From IMG/VR virus record IMGVR_UViG_3300043570_001980, positions 62,001 through 126,000 of that record: a DNA stretch of 64,000 bases. One strand, 5' to 3'. The notes beneath the pieces were generated by a model. The model saw only the letters and a list, made by a program, of their open reading frames with translations, did not search any database and was not told where the DNA came from. Of this stretch, positions 10,044-63,937 are shown piece by piece (position 1 is the first letter of the stretch; each line of letters begins with the position of its first letter). Both the position numbers and the translations under genes were made by a program.

Positions 10044-12335
10044 ATGCAAAATAATCCCGAAATTGAACAAATCATTGATGCGGCAGTTAGAATTGCCCGA
10101 GATAAAAAACACGAATATGTGTTAACTGAGCATCTATTGTTGTCGTTACTACAATACAATCCATTCAGAAATGTATTAATTAAGTTTGGTTCTGAAGTAG
10201 ACATGCTGGAAGCAGAATTAACTGCATATTTAGAAAATATGATCAATCTACGCAGTGACAAAGAAGATGTTCAACCTCGAAAAACAAATGCACTAGAACG
10301 TATTTTTAATCGTGCGTTGACACAGGTGTTGTTCACTGGTCGCCGAGTAATCACCACAATTGATCTTTATCTTGCAATCATGAGTGAGAGCAATAGTCAT
10401 GCACACTACTTCTTGCTCAAGTACGGTGTAACAAAAGCAGAGTTTGTGAAATTCTGGGAACAAAATTACAAGCACGGCGATGTTAAAATCACCAATCAAC
10501 AGGCCACAGAAATACTTGAAGAACATTGTACCAACATTACTGACCAGGCCAAAAAAGATCAACTTGAACCAGTGATTGGGCGGGAAAAAGACATTGAAGA
10601 AATGGTCACTGTGTTAGCACGTAGATTTAAAGCCAATGTGCTAATGGTAGGAGATCCCGGAGTGGGCAAAACTGCCATCATTGAAGGATTGGCACAGCGT
10701 ATTGTCAACAACACCGTTCCTAGTTTCCTTAGGGACCATGAAGTGTGGAGTTTGGAAATTGGCAGTTTACTAGCAGGTTCAAAATATCGCGGGGAGTTTG
10801 AAGAAAAACTCAAGCAGGTAATTGATGCTTTAGAAAGCAAAAAGAATTGTGTTTTGTTCATTGATGAAGCTCATACCATGCGTGGTGCAGGCAGTTCAGG
10901 ACAGAGTCAACTGGACTTTGCCAACATGATCAAGCCAGCCATTACCAAAGGTGTACTTAAAGTTGTAGCTAGTACTACCTGGGAAGAGTACTACGAAAGT
11001 TTTGAAAAGGATCGTGCATTAATGCGTAGATTCTATAGACTCAGCATTGACGAGCCAAACAAAGAAACCACAGAAAAAATTCTTATTGGACTGAGTCCGC
11101 GGCTGGAAAAGTTTCACAATGTGATGATTGATACAGATGCTATTATGTCAGCAGTTGAACTAAGTGGTCGTTATATTCATGACAAAAAGAATCCTGACAA
11201 AAGCATTGATTTAATTGATGCTGCCTGTGCCCGTGAAAGAGTCAAAGATGCAGGTACGTTAACAGTTACAAAAGAATTAATTATGCAACAGGTCAGTCGT
11301 GTTGCTGGCGTACCAATGGATCATTTGGCCAATCAACAGAGTACACGTATTATTGATCTTGAAAGTAATATCAAACAACGAGTATATGGTCAAGACCAAG
11401 TAATTGACACAGTACTAGATCGTATCTATGTAAGTTTTGCTGGCATCAATACAACAAGAAAACCCATGTCTAGTTTCTTATTCTTGGGCCCAACTGGCAC
11501 AGGTAAAACTGAATTAGCACGTATGTTAGCCGAATACCTTGATATGAAATTACTCAAGTACGACATGAGTGAGTACCAAGAAAAGCATACTGTATCAAGT
11601 TTGATTGGTGCTCCACCGGGCTATGTTGGGTTCGAAGATGGCAATCTTGGTGGCGGCAAATTAATCAGCGATCTGAGCAAGCACCCATTTTCAATATTAT
11701 TGTTTGACGAAGTAGAAAAAGCACATCCTGATGTAAGCAACATCTTTTTACAATTGCTTGATGAAGGAAAAATTACAGGTAGCAACGGAAAAACAGTTGA
11801 TTGTAAAAATACCATTGTTATCATGACCAGCAATCTTGGCAGCGCCGACAGTGAACGTAATAATATTGGCTTCGGAGACATGGCAAAAACCGGCGAAGAT
11901 GATCGTGCTCTTAAAGAATTTTTTAAACCTGAATTACGCAATCGCTTGGATGCAGTCTGTAAGTTTAGCAAGCTTGATAAGCTAGCAATTAAGAAAATTG
12001 TTATTAAATTCGTTGATGAACTAAAAACCAGTCTAGTTGATAAAAATATTAAACTAAACTTGACAGAGCCAGCAGTTGAACTGTTAGCTGACCGTGGATA
12101 TGATCCGTTGATGGGAGCTCGCCCACTGGGTAGAAAAATTGATGAGCTTATTCGTGTTCCGTTAAGTAGAAAAATTTTATTTGACCGTCTAACTGATTGC
12201 AACATAAATGTTGTTGTAAAGGATGGAGAAATTTACTTTGAAACAGACATAACCGTGCCTGTGCAAGAAACAAATCAACCTACAGTTAACAGTGATGGAT
12301 ACATTGTCCTTGACCAATTCAAACCCAGAATTTGA
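10044..12335 (+). CDS. clpA: ATP-dependent Clp protease ATP-binding subunit ClpA
   Basis: Clp N-domain; two AAA+ modules (GDPGVGKT/FIDEAH and GPTGTGKT/LFDEVEK); GARPL. No ClpB middle domain. Confidence 0.92.
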   Translation: MQNNPEIEQIIDAAVRIARDKKHEYVLTEHLLLSLLQYNPFRNVLIKFGSEVDMLEAELTAYLENMINLRSDKEDVQPRKTNALERIFNRALTQVLFTGRRVITTIDLYLAIMSESNSHAHYFLLKYGVTKAEFVKFWEQNYKHGDVKITNQQATEILEEHCTNITDQAKKDQLEPVIGREKDIEEMVTVLARRFKANVLMVGDPGVGKTAIIEGLAQRIVNNTVPSFLRDHEVWSLEIGSLLAGSKYRGEFEEKLKQVIDALESKKNCVLFIDEAHTMRGAGSSGQSQLDFANMIKPAITKGVLKVVASTTWEEYYESFEKDRALMRRFYRLSIDEPNKETTEKILIGLSPRLEKFHNVMIDTDAIMSAVELSGRYIHDKKNPDKSIDLIDAACARERVKDAGTLTVTKELIMQQVSRVAGVPMDHLANQQSTRIIDLESNIKQRVYGQDQVIDTVLDRIYVSFAGINTTRKPMSSFLFLGPTGTGKTELARMLAEYLDMKLLKYDMSEYQEKHTVSSLIGAPPGYVGFEDGNLGGGKLISDLSKHPFSILLFDEVEKAHPDVSNIFLQLLDEGKITGSNGKTVDCKNTIVIMTSNLGSADSERNNIGFGDMAKTGEDDRALKEFFKPELRNRLDAVCKFSKLDKLAIKKIVIKFVDELKTSLVDKNIKLNLTEPAVELLADRGYDPLMGARPLGRKIDELIRVPLSRKILFDRLTDCNINVVVKDGEIYFETDITVPVQETNQPTVNSDGYIVLDQFKPRI

Positions 12336-56873: not shown

Positions 56874-56951
56874 GGGCCGTTAGCTCATGTTGGTTAGAGC
56901 AGTGGACTCATAATCCATTGGTGCTGTGTTCGACTCACAGACGGCCCACCA
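56874..56951 (+). tRNA. tRNA with CAT anticodon, most like tRNA-Ile2 (lysidine)
   Basis: Cloverleaf GGGCCGT/ACGGCCC, loop CTCATAA, TTCGA, encoded CCA. Resembles ileX rather than Met tRNAs. Confidence 0.85.
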
Positions 56952-56958
56952 GACAATT

Positions 56959-57045
56959 GCGACTGTGGTGAAATAGGTAGACACAAGAGACTTAAAATCT
57001 CTCGCTCGCAAGGGCATGCCGGTTCGATTCCGGCCAGTCGCACCA
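56959..57045 (+). tRNA. tRNA-Leu(TAA)
   Basis: GCGACTG/CAGTCGC acceptor, AGAGA-CTTAAAA-TCTCT, long variable arm, CCA. Confidence 0.93.
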
Positions 57046-57050
57046 ACAAC

Positions 57051-57125
57051 CTGGCCTTAGTTCAATGGACAGAACAGTAGCCTTCTAAGCTATCAATACA
57101 GGTTCGATTCCTGTAGGCCGGACCA
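57051..57125 (+). tRNA. tRNA-Arg(TCT)
   Basis: CTGGCCT/AGGCCGG, GTAGC-CTTCTAA-GCTAT, TTCGA, CCA. Confidence 0.92.
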
Positions 57126-57934: not shown

Positions 57935-58145
57935 CAGTTTATCAGGGTGGTATGTGGCCAGTATTACGCCTCCTGTAAACGGTCGCGTTTCTAAACATGT
58001 ATATGTGGGGTGGACACCTTGCATAGATTGGTGCAAAGAGCAATTTGGAAATAATGCAATAGATGGTTGGAGATTCATCGGAGAAGGTGTATTTGAATTT
58101 AGAGATGAAAAAATGTTAACATTGTTCTTACTGAGGTGGGCATGA
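57927..58145 (+). CDS. Small hypothetical protein
   Basis: ATG 57927; ends FEFRDEKMLTLFLLRWA. Confidence 0.5.
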   Translation: MINSLSGWYVASITPPVNGRVSKHVYVGWTPCIDWCKEQFGNNAIDGWRFIGEGVFEFRDEKMLTLFLLRWA

Positions 58146-58360
58146 TCGAAGTAACTCTCGAAGGACACAACCCAACTCGTGTTATGGAAATAGTACAAGA
58201 GTTGAGAGACAGCGGTCTTCAACAAGGCTCCGACTTTGACTTTCAATATCATCCTCCCAAGTTTGATGCAATAAATGGTCACGAAATGAAACCTAAATAT
58301 ACAATTTTTTTCTTTTACAACAATGCAACTGCCAGTTGGTTTGCATTAAAACACAAGTGA
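58142..58360 (+). CDS. Small hypothetical protein
   Basis: ATGA overlap; gagg SD. Confidence 0.55.
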   Translation: MIEVTLEGHNPTRVMEIVQELRDSGLQQGSDFDFQYHPPKFDAINGHEMKPKYTIFFFYNNATASWFALKHK

Positions 58361-58367
58361 GGTAATT

Positions 58368-58724
58368 ATGGATTGGTCTAAACAAGAAATGGTACGACTG
58401 CTTAAAAGTGCTCCTGGCACACAGTACCAAGAAGCAGATGACACGCAGAAAATGGTCATTAGAGATTGGGTGCGTAGTTTGCTACAAGCAGGTTCTGTCA
58501 GCCTTGAGTTTGTCAAGGCTGATGGTACAATTCGACAAATGAAATGTACTCTTAATCACGACTTGATCAAATGGGAAACTGTTACAGAATCGGCACTCCC
58601 CAAGAAAGAACGCAAAGAACCCACAGAGGATGTTGTGCGGGTGTATGACTTGGAAAAACAAGAATGGCGTAGTTTTAGATTTGACCGACTGCATAAAATT
58701 ACAACCGAGTTATCTTTTACCTAA
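58368..58724 (+). CDS. DUF2693/WYL_2-like SH3-fold protein
   Basis: FVKADGTIRQMKCTL and VYDLEKQEWRSFRFD. Confidence 0.7.
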   Translation: MDWSKQEMVRLLKSAPGTQYQEADDTQKMVIRDWVRSLLQAGSVSLEFVKADGTIRQMKCTLNHDLIKWETVTESALPKKERKEPTEDVVRVYDLEKQEWRSFRFDRLHKITTELSFT

Positions 58725-58728
58725 TTGG

Positions 58729-58772
58729 TTGCAAATATTTTTTGTATAGTATAAAATAACGAATTATAAATA
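58729..58772 (+). promoter_or_regulatory. Sigma70-type plus perfect T4 late-type promoter for groES
   Basis: TTGCAA-17 nt-TAAAAT, and TATAAATA at 58765. Confidence 0.65.
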
Positions 58773-58776
58773 TTGA

Positions 58777-58834
58777 TTCGTGATGCCATTCATGGGTCAT
58801 GAATAAAATCTTGCTTAATTTAAAGGAGAAAAAT

Positions 58835-58837
<3 letters not shown>
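58777..58837 (+). promoter_or_regulatory. ROSE-like RNA thermometer in the groES 5' UTR
   Basis: Two hairpins; TCTTGCTT pairs with AAAGGAGA (SD) with a bulged G, the ROSE U(U/C)GCU signature. Confidence 0.65.
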
Positions 58838-60753
<1,916 letters not shown>

Positions 60754-60794: not shown

Positions 60795-60880
60795 ATTGAT
60801 TTTTTCTATTGTCGTTATTAAAACAATTTCAAGAAAAATCCATAAATCTGCTTGATTATATAGATATATAATATTATAAT
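60795..60880 (+). promoter_or_regulatory. OxyR-like site plus sigma70 promoter of ahpC
   Basis: ATTG-N7-CTAT-N7-ATTA at 60795; TTGATT-17 nt-TATAAT at 60852-60880. Confidence 0.5.
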
Positions 60881-60928: not shown

Positions 60929-61489
60929 ATGAAAACAGTTGGCGATAAATTAACCCCATTTGCAGTAACAGGTGTCAAGCCAGGACAACCAGAAGATGCC
61001 TTCTATACAATTACAGAAAAATCATTTGAAGGCAAGTGGAAAGTAATTGTTTACTATCCAAAGGACTTTACATTTGTATGCCCTACAGAAATTGTAGCAT
61101 ATGACAAATTAGCAGGTGACTTTGCCGAGCGTGATGCAGTTTTACTCACAGGCTCGACAGACAACGAGTTCTGTAAGGTAGCATGGCAAAAGTCACACGA
61201 TGACTTGCGCAAGATTATACATCACCAGTTTGCTGATACTGCTCGTCACCAACCTGGCGAAGAACGTGGCGGTGTAAGTCTTATTGAGCAGTTGGGCGTG
61301 TTCTATGCTCCAGCAGGTGCCGCACTTCGTGCCACATTCATCGTTGACCCAGACAACGTTATCCAGCACGTTACTGTGAACAACTTGAATGTTGGTCGTA
61401 GCCCAGAAGAAACTCTGCGTGTGTTGGATGCGTTACAGACTGGCGAACTATGTGCCTGTAACCGTACCGTTGGCGGCGAGACACTATAA
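60929..61489 (+). CDS. ahpC: Peroxiredoxin AhpC
   Basis: YYPKDFTFVCPTE, GELCACN. Confidence 0.95.
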   Translation: MKTVGDKLTPFAVTGVKPGQPEDAFYTITEKSFEGKWKVIVYYPKDFTFVCPTEIVAYDKLAGDFAERDAVLLTGSTDNEFCKVAWQKSHDDLRKIIHHQFADTARHQPGEERGGVSLIEQLGVFYAPAGAALRATFIVDPDNVIQHVTVNNLNVGRSPEETLRVLDALQTGELCACNRTVGGETL

Positions 61490-61995
61490 TGGCATTTATT
61501 GACGCAATTAAAACTGCGTTGCCAGACTACGCCAAGGACACCAAGTTAAACCTTGATGCTGTTCTTGTGCGTAGCACATTGGATGCTGATGTGGCCATGG
61601 GTTGTGCTGTGGCCGCACTCGCCGCAACTGGTAACGGAAAGGTATTAGCTGTTATGTTAGCGGATCAACCAGTACATGCTGAATCAGCAATGACCGCCGC
61701 TTCAATTATGGCACAGAACAATGTATGGTATCCCTACGTTGAGATGGCTGACGATCCTGCTCTTAAAGGATTGCCAGCACAGTTACGCATGAATGCCATT
61801 GCCAGTCACGGTGGAACTACCAAGTCAAACTTTGAGGCATTTAGTTTAGCCGCAAGTATTGTGGGCAAGTGCCACTTCTGTGTGAAAGCGCACTACGAAA
61901 CACTCAAGCAAGAAGGATACACAGTAGAGCAATTACGTGATATTGGCCGTATTGCCAGTGTTATGAATTCGGTGGCCAAAGTTCTGAACAGCTAA
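61489..61995 (+). CDS. ahpD: Alkyl hydroperoxide reductase AhpD
   Basis: LPDYAKDTKLNL, MAQNNVWY, SIVGKCHFCVKAH. Confidence 0.93.
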   Translation: MAFIDAIKTALPDYAKDTKLNLDAVLVRSTLDADVAMGCAVAALAATGNGKVLAVMLADQPVHAESAMTAASIMAQNNVWYPYVEMADDPALKGLPAQLRMNAIASHGGTTKSNFEAFSLAASIVGKCHFCVKAHYETLKQEGYTVEQLRDIGRIASVMNSVAKVLNS

Positions 61996-63693: not shown

Positions 63694-63783
63694 GGAGCGG
63701 TGGCCGAACGGTAAGGCAGCGGATTGCTAATCCGTACAACGTGTTAAAGCGTTGACTGGGTTCGACTCCCAGTCGCTCCGCCA
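63694..63783 (+). tRNA. tRNA-Ser(GCT)
   Basis: GGAGCGG/TCGCTCC, loop TTGCTAA, long variable arm, GCCA end. Confidence 0.93.
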
Positions 63784-63789
63784 AGTTTT

Positions 63790-63854
63790 GAGAGTCACAT
63801 CGCCTGGATACTTCCTTTGGTAACAAAGCACTAGGTCCTGCAACCGTGGCTCTC
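63790..63854 (+). ncRNA. Candidate small structured RNA between tRNA genes
   Basis: GAGAGTCAC/GTGGCTCTC, CCTGG/CTAGG, CTTTG-GTAA-CAAAG. Confidence 0.45.
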
Positions 63855-63862
63855 CCTTATTT

Positions 63863-63937
63863 GCTCGATTCGTCTATCGGTTAGGACATGCGGTTTTCAT
63901 CCGCATAAGAGCGGTTCGACTCCGCTATCGAGTACCA
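63863..63937 (+). tRNA. tRNA-Glu(TTC)
   Basis: GCTCGAT/ATCGAGT, TGCGG-TTTTCAT-CCGCA, TTCGA, CCA. Confidence 0.93.

What the first reader, a model, noticed from the sequence alone, without database searches (positions are those of the whole stretch)
58765..58837. ROSE-like RNA thermometer controlling phage groES-groEL
Seen: after TATAAATA, hairpin 1 TTCGTGA..CC/GG..TCATGAA; then TCTTGCTT(58809) pairs with AAAGGAGA(58822), with G58813 bulged opposite the SD; ATG at 58835. Known: ROSE elements use U(U/C)GCU against the SD with a bulged G and usually control small heat-shock genes in alpha/gamma-proteobacteria. Inference: temperature-gated translation of a phage chaperonin, a context I do not know to be described.
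Basis: partly seen in the sequence, partly recalled or inferred. Interest (0 to 1): 0.7.

Follow-up and report, generated by a model that had tools for sequence, protein, structure and literature searches.

The report
ROSE-like RNA thermometer before phage groES
The short leader in front of this giant phage's groES-groEL chaperonin genes is a two-hairpin ROSE-type RNA element that hides the ribosome-binding site, the same device bacteria use to make small heat-shock proteins only when warm, and related phages carry it in front of groES, dnaK and hsp20 genes.

Summary
A TATAAATA box (58765-58772) is followed by a stable hairpin I (58777-58803). A weak hairpin II then pairs UCUUgCUU (58809-58816, G58813 bulged) with the Shine-Dalgarno AAGGAGA (58823-58829), 5 nt before the groES ATG (58835).

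Rfam's ROSE_3 model matches end to end, with the start codons aligned, at 30.4 bits (E 6e-4). This is below its gathering score of 43.

Comparative evidence is stronger. Twelve distinct phage groES leaders, found by protein homology, keep both hairpins. Hairpin I covaries at 8 of 10 pairs. The hairpin II core is invariant while its loop varies.

Related leaders precede more than 100 distinct phage sHSP, DnaK and GroES genes. These include cultured phages (Melnitz, HTVC103P, Mosig, HTVC008M). In bacteria, 22 matches in one alphaproteobacterial order all preceded sHSP genes.

The TATAAATA box belongs to a strand-biased, intergenic ATAAATA class. Near-complete relatives encode a T4 gp55-like late sigma factor, so late transcription is likely.

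Temperature response is inferred, not shown. groEL has its own unsequestered SD. I found no paper describing ROSE elements in phages or before groES. Verdict: a real, conserved ROSE-like element, a new member of a known kind in a new context.

The parts
58765..58772 (+). TATAAATA promoter box (T4-type late-promoter consensus; also reads as a -10-like TATAAA)
   Evidence: This is the only TATAAATA in the window. It belongs to an ATAAATA class found 14 times on the + strand and 2 times on the - strand of the 128.8-kb record. Twelve of the 14 are intergenic, mostly 12-45 nt before an ORF. The window holds 6, all on +, against 16.1 +/- 4.2 expected. Near-complete relatives encode a gp55-like late sigma factor. 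Related leaders have TATAAATA or TATAAT at the same distance from hairpin I.
58777..58803 (+). Hairpin I: stable 5'-terminal stem-loop with a bulged G (58785). The predicted transcript start lies at its base, about 58777-58779.
   Evidence: It is part of the minimum-free-energy fold. Predicted energy is -16 kcal/mol at 5 C and -9.2 at 37 C. Pairs with changes on both sides number 8 of 10 in alignment A1, 9 of 10 in A2 and 9 of 10 in A4. Its upper stem, GAUGCC...GGGUC, matches the ROSE_3 consensus. Phage-specific metatranscriptome contigs start at 58789 and 58804, and none covers 58300-58719.
58809..58816 (+). Anti-SD UCUUgCUU containing the ROSE motif UUGCU; G58813 is bulged
   Evidence: It is invariant in all 12 distinct groES leaders found by protein homology. 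It is predicted to pair with 58823-58829. Some relatives replace the bulged G with a bulged A, giving UCUUACUU.
58817..58822 (+). Loop of hairpin II (AAUUUA)
   Evidence: Its sequence and length vary among relatives while both stem arms stay constant.
58823..58829 (+). Shine-Dalgarno AAGGAGA of groES, sequestered in hairpin II
   Evidence: Seen in the folds. Predicted hairpin II energy is -7.2 kcal/mol at 5 C, -4.7 at 20 C, -1.9 at 37 C and -1.0 at 42 C.
58835..59122 (+). groES (Cpn10, 95 aa); the start codon 58835-58837 is unpaired
   Evidence: Pfam PF00166, E 1.9e-32; ORF listing.
59134..60753 (+). groEL (Cpn60, 539 aa) with its own SD AAGGAGA at 59121-59127, outside the ROSE hairpin
   Evidence: Pfam PF00118, E 3.6e-77; sequence.

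Best explanation
The groES-groEL operon of this jumbo phage has a 58-nt leader that is a short, two-hairpin ROSE-like RNA thermometer.

Transcription most likely starts 5-7 nt after the TATAAATA box, at the base of hairpin I. That box is probably a T4-type late promoter read by a gp55-like phage sigma factor.

Hairpin I is a stable 5' stem that does not melt. By analogy with Pseudomonas ibpA, it helps folding or mRNA stability.

Hairpin II is a deliberately weak 7-pair stem with one U.G pair and a bulged G. It pairs UCUUgCUU with the Shine-Dalgarno AAGGAGA. At low temperature this blocks 30S binding to the groES start. As temperature rises the stem opens gradually and groES is translated.

groEL follows with its own free SD. 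Any effect on GroEL is therefore indirect, through coupling or mRNA stability.

Shown here: the sequence, the conserved structure, the covariation of hairpin I, the invariance of the anti-SD, the similarity to ROSE_3, and the distribution across phages and bacteria.

Inferred: the transcript start, the melting behaviour and the temperature response.
For: - ROSE_3 is the only Rfam match at E below 1. It covers the full model and aligns the AUGs.
- Both hairpins form in the minimum-free-energy fold at 5-45 C, with hairpin II marginal and hairpin I stable.
- A two-state estimate from the energies puts the open fraction of hairpin II at about 2e-6 at 5 C, 1e-3 at 25 C and 5e-2 at 37 C.
- Twelve distinct groES leaders found through the protein (GroES 46-99% identical) all keep the architecture. 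Hairpin I covaries and UCUUGCUUA and GGAG are invariant.
- The U.G pair next to the bulge is U.G in all 32 distinct rows of the protein-first set and in all 67 distinct rows of the pattern-ascertained set. This fits selection for a weak stem.
- Covariance model R1, built from these leaders, hits 44 of 80 viral groES loci.
- An exact-motif scan of viral contigs gave 118 distinct leaders before sHSP, DnaK and GroES genes. R1 matched 80 sites in those and the groES loci.
- R1 also hits cultured phages Melnitz, HTVC103P, Mosig, HTVC008M and C48C1 before hsp20.
- It gives one hit per genome in 24 of 42 genomes of an alphaproteobacterial order. All 22 I could parse precede an IbpA-like sHSP, and the one context I examined is chromosomal.
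- Near-identical complete relatives carry a second copy before their IbpA-like Hsp20.
- Short two-hairpin ROSE elements were shown experimentally to be thermometers in Pseudomonas ibpA, with hairpin II melting and hairpin I staying closed (PMC3669281).
- For the promoter: the ATAAATA class and the gp55 homologue.
- For the transcript start: RNA contigs cover groES from 58789 but not the upstream gene.
Against: - The Rfam score of 30.4 is below the gathering score of 43. The ROSE (RF00435) and ROSE_2 (RF01832) models gave no match at E up to 10.
- Hairpin II shows no compensatory change, only invariance, because the SD is constrained for other reasons.
- The fold energy is not unusual for this composition, with a z-score of -1.19.
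- In the full-leader ensemble the SD is still about 80% paired at 37 C. Opening within a lake's temperature range may be small unless ribosomes compete for the SD.
- The RNA evidence consists of assembled contigs without direction or true 5' ends, and DNA carry-over cannot be excluded.
- There is no experiment on any phage copy.
Confidence: 0.7

Rival explanations
1. The leader is mainly a protein-binding site. A small heat-shock protein of the IbpA type, from the phage or the host, binds the ROSE-like leader and represses translation. Repression lifts when the sHSP is drawn away by unfolded or aggregating proteins. The element would then sense folding load rather than temperature, or in addition to it.
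For: E. coli and other gammaproteobacterial IbpA proteins repress translation by binding their own thermometer-type 5'UTRs (PMC10474464; PMC10410725). The complete relatives of this phage encode an IbpA-like Hsp20 with the same kind of leader. The same leader on sHSP, dnaK and groES genes in phages would make one regulon.
Against: Nothing here tests binding. The published effect is shown only for gammaproteobacterial IbpA and its own or the rpoH mRNA. The invariant anti-SD/SD complementarity and the weak stem are already explained by a thermometer. The two mechanisms do not exclude each other.
Confidence: 0.12
2. The leader is a conserved expression cassette without sensing. Hairpin I protects the 5' end from decay, and hairpin II merely sets a fixed, moderate translation rate for a very strong SD.
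For: Hairpin I sits at the predicted 5' end, is stable, and is the part that covaries. In Pseudomonas, hairpin I was proposed to stabilise the mRNA. In the predicted ensemble the SD stays mostly paired up to 45 C.
Against: It does not explain several things. The anti-SD keeps the ROSE motif with a bulge and an invariant U.G pair rather than drifting to a stronger or weaker stem. The element is found almost only before chaperone genes. It matches ROSE_3, the only Rfam ROSE model that hit, and its two-hairpin layout is that of the experimentally proven short thermometers of Pseudomonas ibpA.
Confidence: 0.12
3. Hairpin I is a DNA inverted repeat bound by a repressor, a CIRCE/HrcA-like operator, or it is the terminator of the upstream gene.
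For: An inverted repeat between promoter and groES is where CIRCE sits in many bacteria. Four viral groES loci do carry CIRCE.
Against: The stem sequence changes freely while pairing is kept, and the asymmetric bulge is conserved. That is how an RNA structure behaves, not a protein-binding palindrome. The leader contains no CIRCE consensus. No U-tract follows the stem and no terminator was called there. The stem lies downstream of the promoter box.
Confidence: 0.03

Closest known systems
Short two-hairpin ROSE-like thermometers of Pseudomonas ibpA (Krajewski et al. 2013, PMC3669281). Rfam ROSE_3, RF02523, has the same layout; I could not confirm which sequences it was built from.
   Same: A leader of about 60 nt. 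A stable G+C-rich hairpin I with a bulge and the GAUGCC...GGGUC upper stem. A short hairpin II in which U(U/C)GCU pairs imperfectly with the SD. An unpaired AUG.
   Different: The score is below the family threshold (30.4 against 43). Hairpin II has U-A closing pairs instead of the flanking G-C clamps described for Pseudomonas, so it is weaker. The promoter box is TATAAATA (T4 late type) rather than sigma-32 type. The gene is groES-groEL in a phage, not a bacterial ibpA.
Classical ROSE elements of rhizobia and ROSE-like elements of enterobacterial ibpA (Rfam ROSE RF00435, ROSE_2 RF01832)
   Same: Same principle and the same anti-SD motif with a bulged G opposite the SD. They control heat-shock genes by translation.
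   Different: Those have three or four hairpins and longer leaders. Neither model matched here at E up to 10.
ROSE-like leaders of chromosomal IbpA-like sHSP genes in a small-genome alphaproteobacterial order (found here)
   Same: Nearly identical hairpin II (AUCUUGCUUA...AAGGAGA) and the same hairpin I design. These are probably the source from which phages took the element.
   Different: They precede sHSP genes only, with one copy per genome. They follow a CACUAUAUU box rather than TATAAATA.
Known phage RNA thermometers: lambda cIII (Rfam RF01804) and the fourU element of SPbeta blyA (PMC10586365)
   Same: Temperature-responsive mRNA structures in phage or prophage genes.
   Different: Unrelated structures and logic, and neither controls a chaperone. 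Neither model matched here.
CIRCE/HrcA and sigma-32 control of bacterial groESL
   Same: They regulate the same operon in response to heat.
   Different: Both act on transcription. No CIRCE or sigma-32 consensus is present in this leader. CIRCE was seen in 4 other viral groES loci.

Membership tests
ROSE-like RNA thermometers (functional class) | Lies in the 5'UTR of a heat-shock gene, between promoter and start codon | tested here: met
   The element occupies 58777-58834, between the TATAAATA box and the groES ATG. RNA contigs cover it from 58789 onward. The transcript start itself is inferred.
ROSE-like RNA thermometers (functional class) | Two to four hairpins, with the 3'-proximal one holding the SD | tested here: met
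   Two hairpins appear in the minimum-free-energy fold and in the RNAalifold consensus. Hairpin I is supported by covariation.
ROSE-like RNA thermometers (functional class) | U(U/C)GCU anti-SD motif paired with the SD, with a bulged G | tested here: met
   UUGCU lies at 58811-58815 and G58813 is bulged in every prediction. The motif is invariant in protein-ascertained relatives. The pairing is predicted, not probed.
ROSE-like RNA thermometers (functional class) | Compensatory base changes in the SD hairpin | tested here: inconclusive
   The hairpin II core never varies. Only one-sided changes occur (U-A to U-G), plus bulge G-to-A variants.
ROSE-like RNA thermometers (functional class) | Heat-induced melting of the SD hairpin and temperature-dependent translation | not testable with these tools
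   Only predicted energies are available: hairpin II goes from -7.2 kcal/mol at 5 C to -1.0 at 42 C, while hairpin I stays stable.
ROSE-like RNA thermometers (functional class) | Controls a small heat-shock protein gene (the usual context) | tested here: not met
   Here the gene is groES. The same phage lineage has a second copy before an IbpA-like Hsp20.
Rfam ROSE_3 (RF02523) | Score at or above the curated gathering score of 43 bits | tested here: not met
   The window scores 30.4 bits, E 6e-4, over model positions 1-69 of 69, and gets no match at gathering level. In a gathering-level scan of 18 related viral loci, only one ROSE_3 match passed, the L146 sHSP leader at 44.4 bits. Melnitz scores 34.1 and the others 26.8-27.5.
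Rfam ROSE (RF00435) and ROSE_2 (RF01832) | Match to the covariance model | tested here: not met
   No match at E up to 10 in 58000-59500.
T4-type late promoter | TATAAATA box about 6 nt before the start, no need for a -35 box, and a gp55-type sigma factor in the phage | tested here: inconclusive
   The box is present. The ATAAATA class is strand-biased, intergenic and otherwise depleted. A gp55-like gene (phrog_234, E 2e-23) is found in near-complete relatives but not in the 128.8-kb record. The transcript start is not mapped.

The most novel reading that the evidence does not exclude
Large aquatic phages carry their own proteostasis regulon. Its genes (groES-groEL, dnaK, ibpA-like hsp20) each sit behind the same ROSE-type leader. 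Phages took that leader from host sHSP genes, transplanted it onto other chaperone genes and coupled it to phage (late) promoters. The leader may respond not only to temperature but also to folding load during capsid production, through titration of an IbpA-type repressor. In some phages it gates a conserved 8-codon mini-ORF ahead of groES.
Probability: 0.2. Interest if true: 0.8.

Novelty: new member of a known kind. Interest (0 to 1): 0.6.

Why it matters
RNA thermometers of the ROSE type are known as regulators of bacterial small heat-shock genes. Here the same device sits in a virus, before a chaperonin operon. Sister copies sit before phage dnaK and hsp20 genes in more than a hundred distinct environmental phage sequences and in several cultured marine phages.

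If the element works as in Pseudomonas, phages tune their own chaperone supply to water temperature, and possibly to folding stress, during infection. That bears on how temperature shapes phage production in lakes and oceans.

It also shows a regulatory RNA moving between genes and between host and virus. All but one of the copies scored here fall below Rfam's threshold, which would explain why routine annotation has missed them. Cultured carriers such as Melnitz on OM43 and HTVC008M, Mosig and HTVC103P on Pelagibacter make the idea directly testable.

Tried and rejected
- Fold stability as evidence. The z-score is -1.19, which is not informative.
- Other Rfam families (ROSE, ROSE_2, fourU, lambda cIII, Pseudomon-groES). 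None matched; only chance-level snoRNA hits appeared.
- More copies in the window or genome. R1 finds only the groES copy. A 22.7-bit hit at G000:C1:18041-18095 turned out to be an unrelated hairpin before a small secreted protein. The Clp-like ATPase gene at 10044 has no such leader.
- 'The exact motif is virus-only.' The scan of 185,579 bacterial species with TTCTTGCTTA...AAGGAGA...ATG gave about chance-level noise and roughly 7 real sHSP leaders. That pattern misses the AUCUUGCUUA form carried by the window itself. The covariance model then found the element in 24 of 42 genomes of one alphaproteobacterial order, so I dropped the claim.
- A betaproteobacterial source. R1 found nothing in 150 other genomes of the order holding the Polynucleobacter MAG. 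It found nothing in 150 further genomes of the class of G002 (the MAG titled Rickettsiales bacterium) and one match in 150 of the class of the Polynucleobacter MAG. Only 33 candidates per genome were scored.
- Cultured phages with groES. BcepSaruman and Motura have no such leader. Cyanophage S-TIM5 hsp20 has none either.
- A sigma-70 reading of the promoter. The scan flags TTGCAA-17-TAAAAT at 58729-58757. TTGTAT-17-TATAAA is weak and lacks the final T. The late-promoter reading fits better, but the start is unmapped.
- Metatranscriptomes. Most laid contigs were conserved groEL pieces of other organisms, and only a few contigs are phage-specific.

Full report
**What is there**

The window is part of a 128.8-kb IMG/VR virus record estimated at about 35% complete. 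It carries a T4-type DNA polymerase, a Clp-like ATPase and tRNA genes.

Near-identical records of 342 and 345 kb are 95-99% complete, so this is a jumbo phage.

- groES (Cpn10) runs 58835-59122.
- groEL (Cpn60) runs 59134-60753.
- An AhpC/AhpD pair follows.
- The gene upstream (58368-58724) encodes a WYL_2-domain protein.

- TATAAATA at 58765-58772;
- hairpin I at 58777-58803;
- UCUUGCUU at 58809-58816;
- AAGGAGA at 58823-58829;
- ATG at 58835.

RNAfold gives both hairpins as the minimum-free-energy structure with G58813 bulged.

**Is it more than chance?**

Fold energy alone is not (z = -1.19). That is expected for an element that must melt. Three other lines of evidence are beyond chance.

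First, among 4227 Rfam families only ROSE_3 matches at E below 1. It scores 30.4 bits (E 6e-4 for 1.5 kb), covers the whole model, and places the model's AUG on the groES AUG. The upper stem of hairpin I (GAUGCC...GGGUC) matches the consensus letter for letter. This is below the gathering score of 43, so routine annotation does not report it.

Second, I searched viral contigs with the GroES protein, not with the RNA. This gave 18 loci and 12 distinct leaders, with GroES 46-99% identical to the window's. All have both hairpins.

- With the structure written by hand, 97% of cells pair and 8 of 10 hairpin I pairs show changes on both sides. No shuffle of 500 reaches the covariation score, and sliding the partners by 1-3 columns collapses pairing to about 50%.
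- RNAalifold finds the same two hairpins and both bulges unaided.
- In hairpin II the arms UCUUGCUUA and GGAG are invariant while the loop changes in sequence and length. There is no compensatory change there, because the SD is fixed for other reasons. The support for hairpin II is invariance plus complementarity, not covariation.

Third, a wider protein-first survey covered 80 viral groES loci with 59 distinct upstream regions.

- Covariance model R1 hits 44 loci.
- In 32 loci the hit abuts groES. Hairpin I covaries at 9 of 10 pairs in this set.
- Variants keep the design. Four loci have UCUUACUU, a bulged A instead of G. Others have ACUUGCUU or UUCGCUU.
- The U.G pair beside the bulge is never replaced by C-G in 32 and 67 distinct sequences. 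This fits selection for a weak stem.

**How widespread, and where from**

It gave 118 distinct leaders, about 63 before IbpA-like sHSP genes, about 30 before dnaK and 11 before groES. Nearly all have a hairpin I and a TATAAATA or TATAAT box about 6 nt upstream.

The complete relatives of this phage have a second copy before an IbpA-like Hsp20.

Cultured phages carry it before hsp20:

- Methylophilales phage Melnitz (R1 40.5 bits);
- Pelagibacter phages HTVC103P (29.6 bits), Mosig and HTVC008M;
- phage C48C1.

All score below Rfam's threshold.

In bacteria the picture is narrower.

- The exact motif gave mostly noise.
- R1 found exactly one copy in 24 of 42 genomes of one order of small-genome Alphaproteobacteria. 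All 22 matches I could parse precede an IbpA-like sHSP.
- The one context I examined is plainly chromosomal, with dapA, folK, rpoZ and smpB nearby.
- R1 found it in almost none of 450 other sampled proteobacterial genomes, with limited sensitivity.

So, in what was searched, the element before sHSP genes is shared by bacteria and phages. Its use before groES and dnaK was seen only in phages.

**Promoter and timing**

TATAAATA is the T4 late-promoter consensus; that is established knowledge, not something tested here.

- In the 128.8-kb record ATAAATA occurs 14 times on the coding strand and twice on the other.
- Twelve of the 14 are intergenic, mostly 12-45 nt before an ORF.
- The window has 6, all on the + strand, against 16 expected. 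The motif is avoided except where it could be a promoter.
- The near-complete relatives encode a gp55-like late sigma factor (phrog_234, E 2e-23).

A late promoter with a start at the base of hairpin I is therefore the best reading. Late expression would suit a chaperonin needed for capsid folding.

Four metatranscriptomes hold phage-specific contigs covering 58789-59140 and 58804-59005, and nothing over 58300-58719. This agrees with a start between the upstream gene and 58789, but it is weak evidence.

**Mechanism**

Predicted energies are as follows:

| Temperature | Hairpin II (kcal/mol) |
|---|---|
| 5 C | -7.2 |
| 20 C | -4.7 |
| 37 C | -1.9 |
| 42 C | -1.0 |

Hairpin I goes from -16 at 5 C to -9 at 37 C.

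A two-state estimate from these numbers puts the open fraction of hairpin II at about 2e-6 at 5 C, 1e-3 at 25 C and 5e-2 at 37 C. That is a steep response across natural water temperatures.

This mirrors the Pseudomonas ibpA elements. There, probing showed hairpin II melting and hairpin I staying closed, and deleting the bulged G locked the element shut (PMC3669281).

Only the groES SD is sequestered. groEL has its own AAGGAGA at 59121-59127.

A second layer is possible. IbpA proteins repress translation by binding thermometer-type leaders (PMC10474464, PMC10410725), and this phage lineage encodes an IbpA-like protein.

**Comparison and novelty**

By architecture and motif this is a short ROSE-like element of the Pseudomonas type. 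It fails Rfam's numeric threshold and the usual gene context. It differs in three ways:

- a weaker hairpin II without G-C clamps;
- its promoter type;
- its location in a phage before groES-groEL.

Seven full-text searches found no description of ROSE elements in phages or before groES or dnaK. The Melnitz genome paper mentions Hsp20 once and 'thermometer' not at all.

I rate it a new member of a known kind in a new and broad context.

- Confidence that it is a genuine conserved ROSE-like RNA: about 0.85.
- Confidence that it acts as a thermometer on groES: about 0.7.

Noticed in passing
L360, L364, L369, L372-L375, L379, L399, L400, L408, L413 (about 100-200 nt before groES at 1501): In another clade of phage groES loci the ROSE-like leader, with its TTATAAATAA box, is followed by a conserved mini-ORF of 8-14 codons (MSKHTYLT*, MSKQPFLT*, MTKSSQPVWLF*). 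About 100 nt further on comes a strong TTGACA-N17-TACAAT promoter, and only then groES. This is either the relic of a deleted ROSE-controlled gene or a ROSE-gated leader peptide.
   Followed up: partly
Own genome outside the window: G000:C1:10254-10320 (L439:455-521): A second, weaker ROSE_3-like two-hairpin leader (21.4 bits, E 0.04; anti-SD CUCgCUU against AAGGAG) lies before a 91-aa ORF with no Pfam match.
   Followed up: partly
G154:C1:330569-330641 and G155:C1:92140-92212 (L430, L429): Near-complete relatives of this phage carry a ROSE-like leader (ACUUGCUU variant) before an IbpA-like Hsp20 of 144 aa. It follows TTGACT-N17-TATAAA, with TG directly before the -10 box (TGTATAAATA).
   Followed up: yes
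Window 5649, 9961, 13023, 45261, 54940, 58766 (+); whole record: ATAAATA boxes occur only on the coding strand, are intergenic, and are depleted elsewhere. This looks like a T4-type late-promoter class. A gp55-like sigma factor is present in relatives at G154:C1:206307-206615.
   Followed up: partly
L146:6896-7269, L017:1880-2262, L020:2498-2888: Related phage loci encode a two-piece (permuted) tmRNA of the betaproteobacterial type next to the chaperone genes. L020 also has a cluster of seven tRNA genes. This hints that those phages have betaproteobacterial hosts.
   Followed up: no
Window 60929-61995: A phage-encoded peroxiredoxin pair, AhpC-like (186 aa) and AhpD/CMD-like (168 aa), lies directly downstream of groEL with its own TTGATT-17-TATAAT promoter-like site at 60852-60880.
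   Followed up: no
Window 10044-12335: A 763-aa Clp/Hsp100-like ATPase (phrog_4871, E 1e-238) is a further proteostasis gene in the phage. It has no ROSE-like leader.
   Followed up: partly
L359, L363, L386, L394: Four viral-contig groES genes are preceded by a CIRCE inverted repeat (TTAGCACTC...GAGTGCTAA). These are either host-type HrcA control carried on phage contigs or bacterial DNA in the viral collection.
   Followed up: no
L342, L440-L461 (bacterial sHSP leaders): In the alphaproteobacterial copies the box before hairpin I is CACTATATT rather than TATAAATA. It may be an RpoH-type -10 element, so host and phage copies would share the RNA but not the promoter.
   Followed up: no
Window 56874-57125 and 63694-63937; L168:1987-2037: tRNA genes (Met, Leu, Arg; Ser, Glu) flank the chaperonin block. 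A glutamine riboswitch just reaches its threshold in one related viral locus.
   Followed up: no
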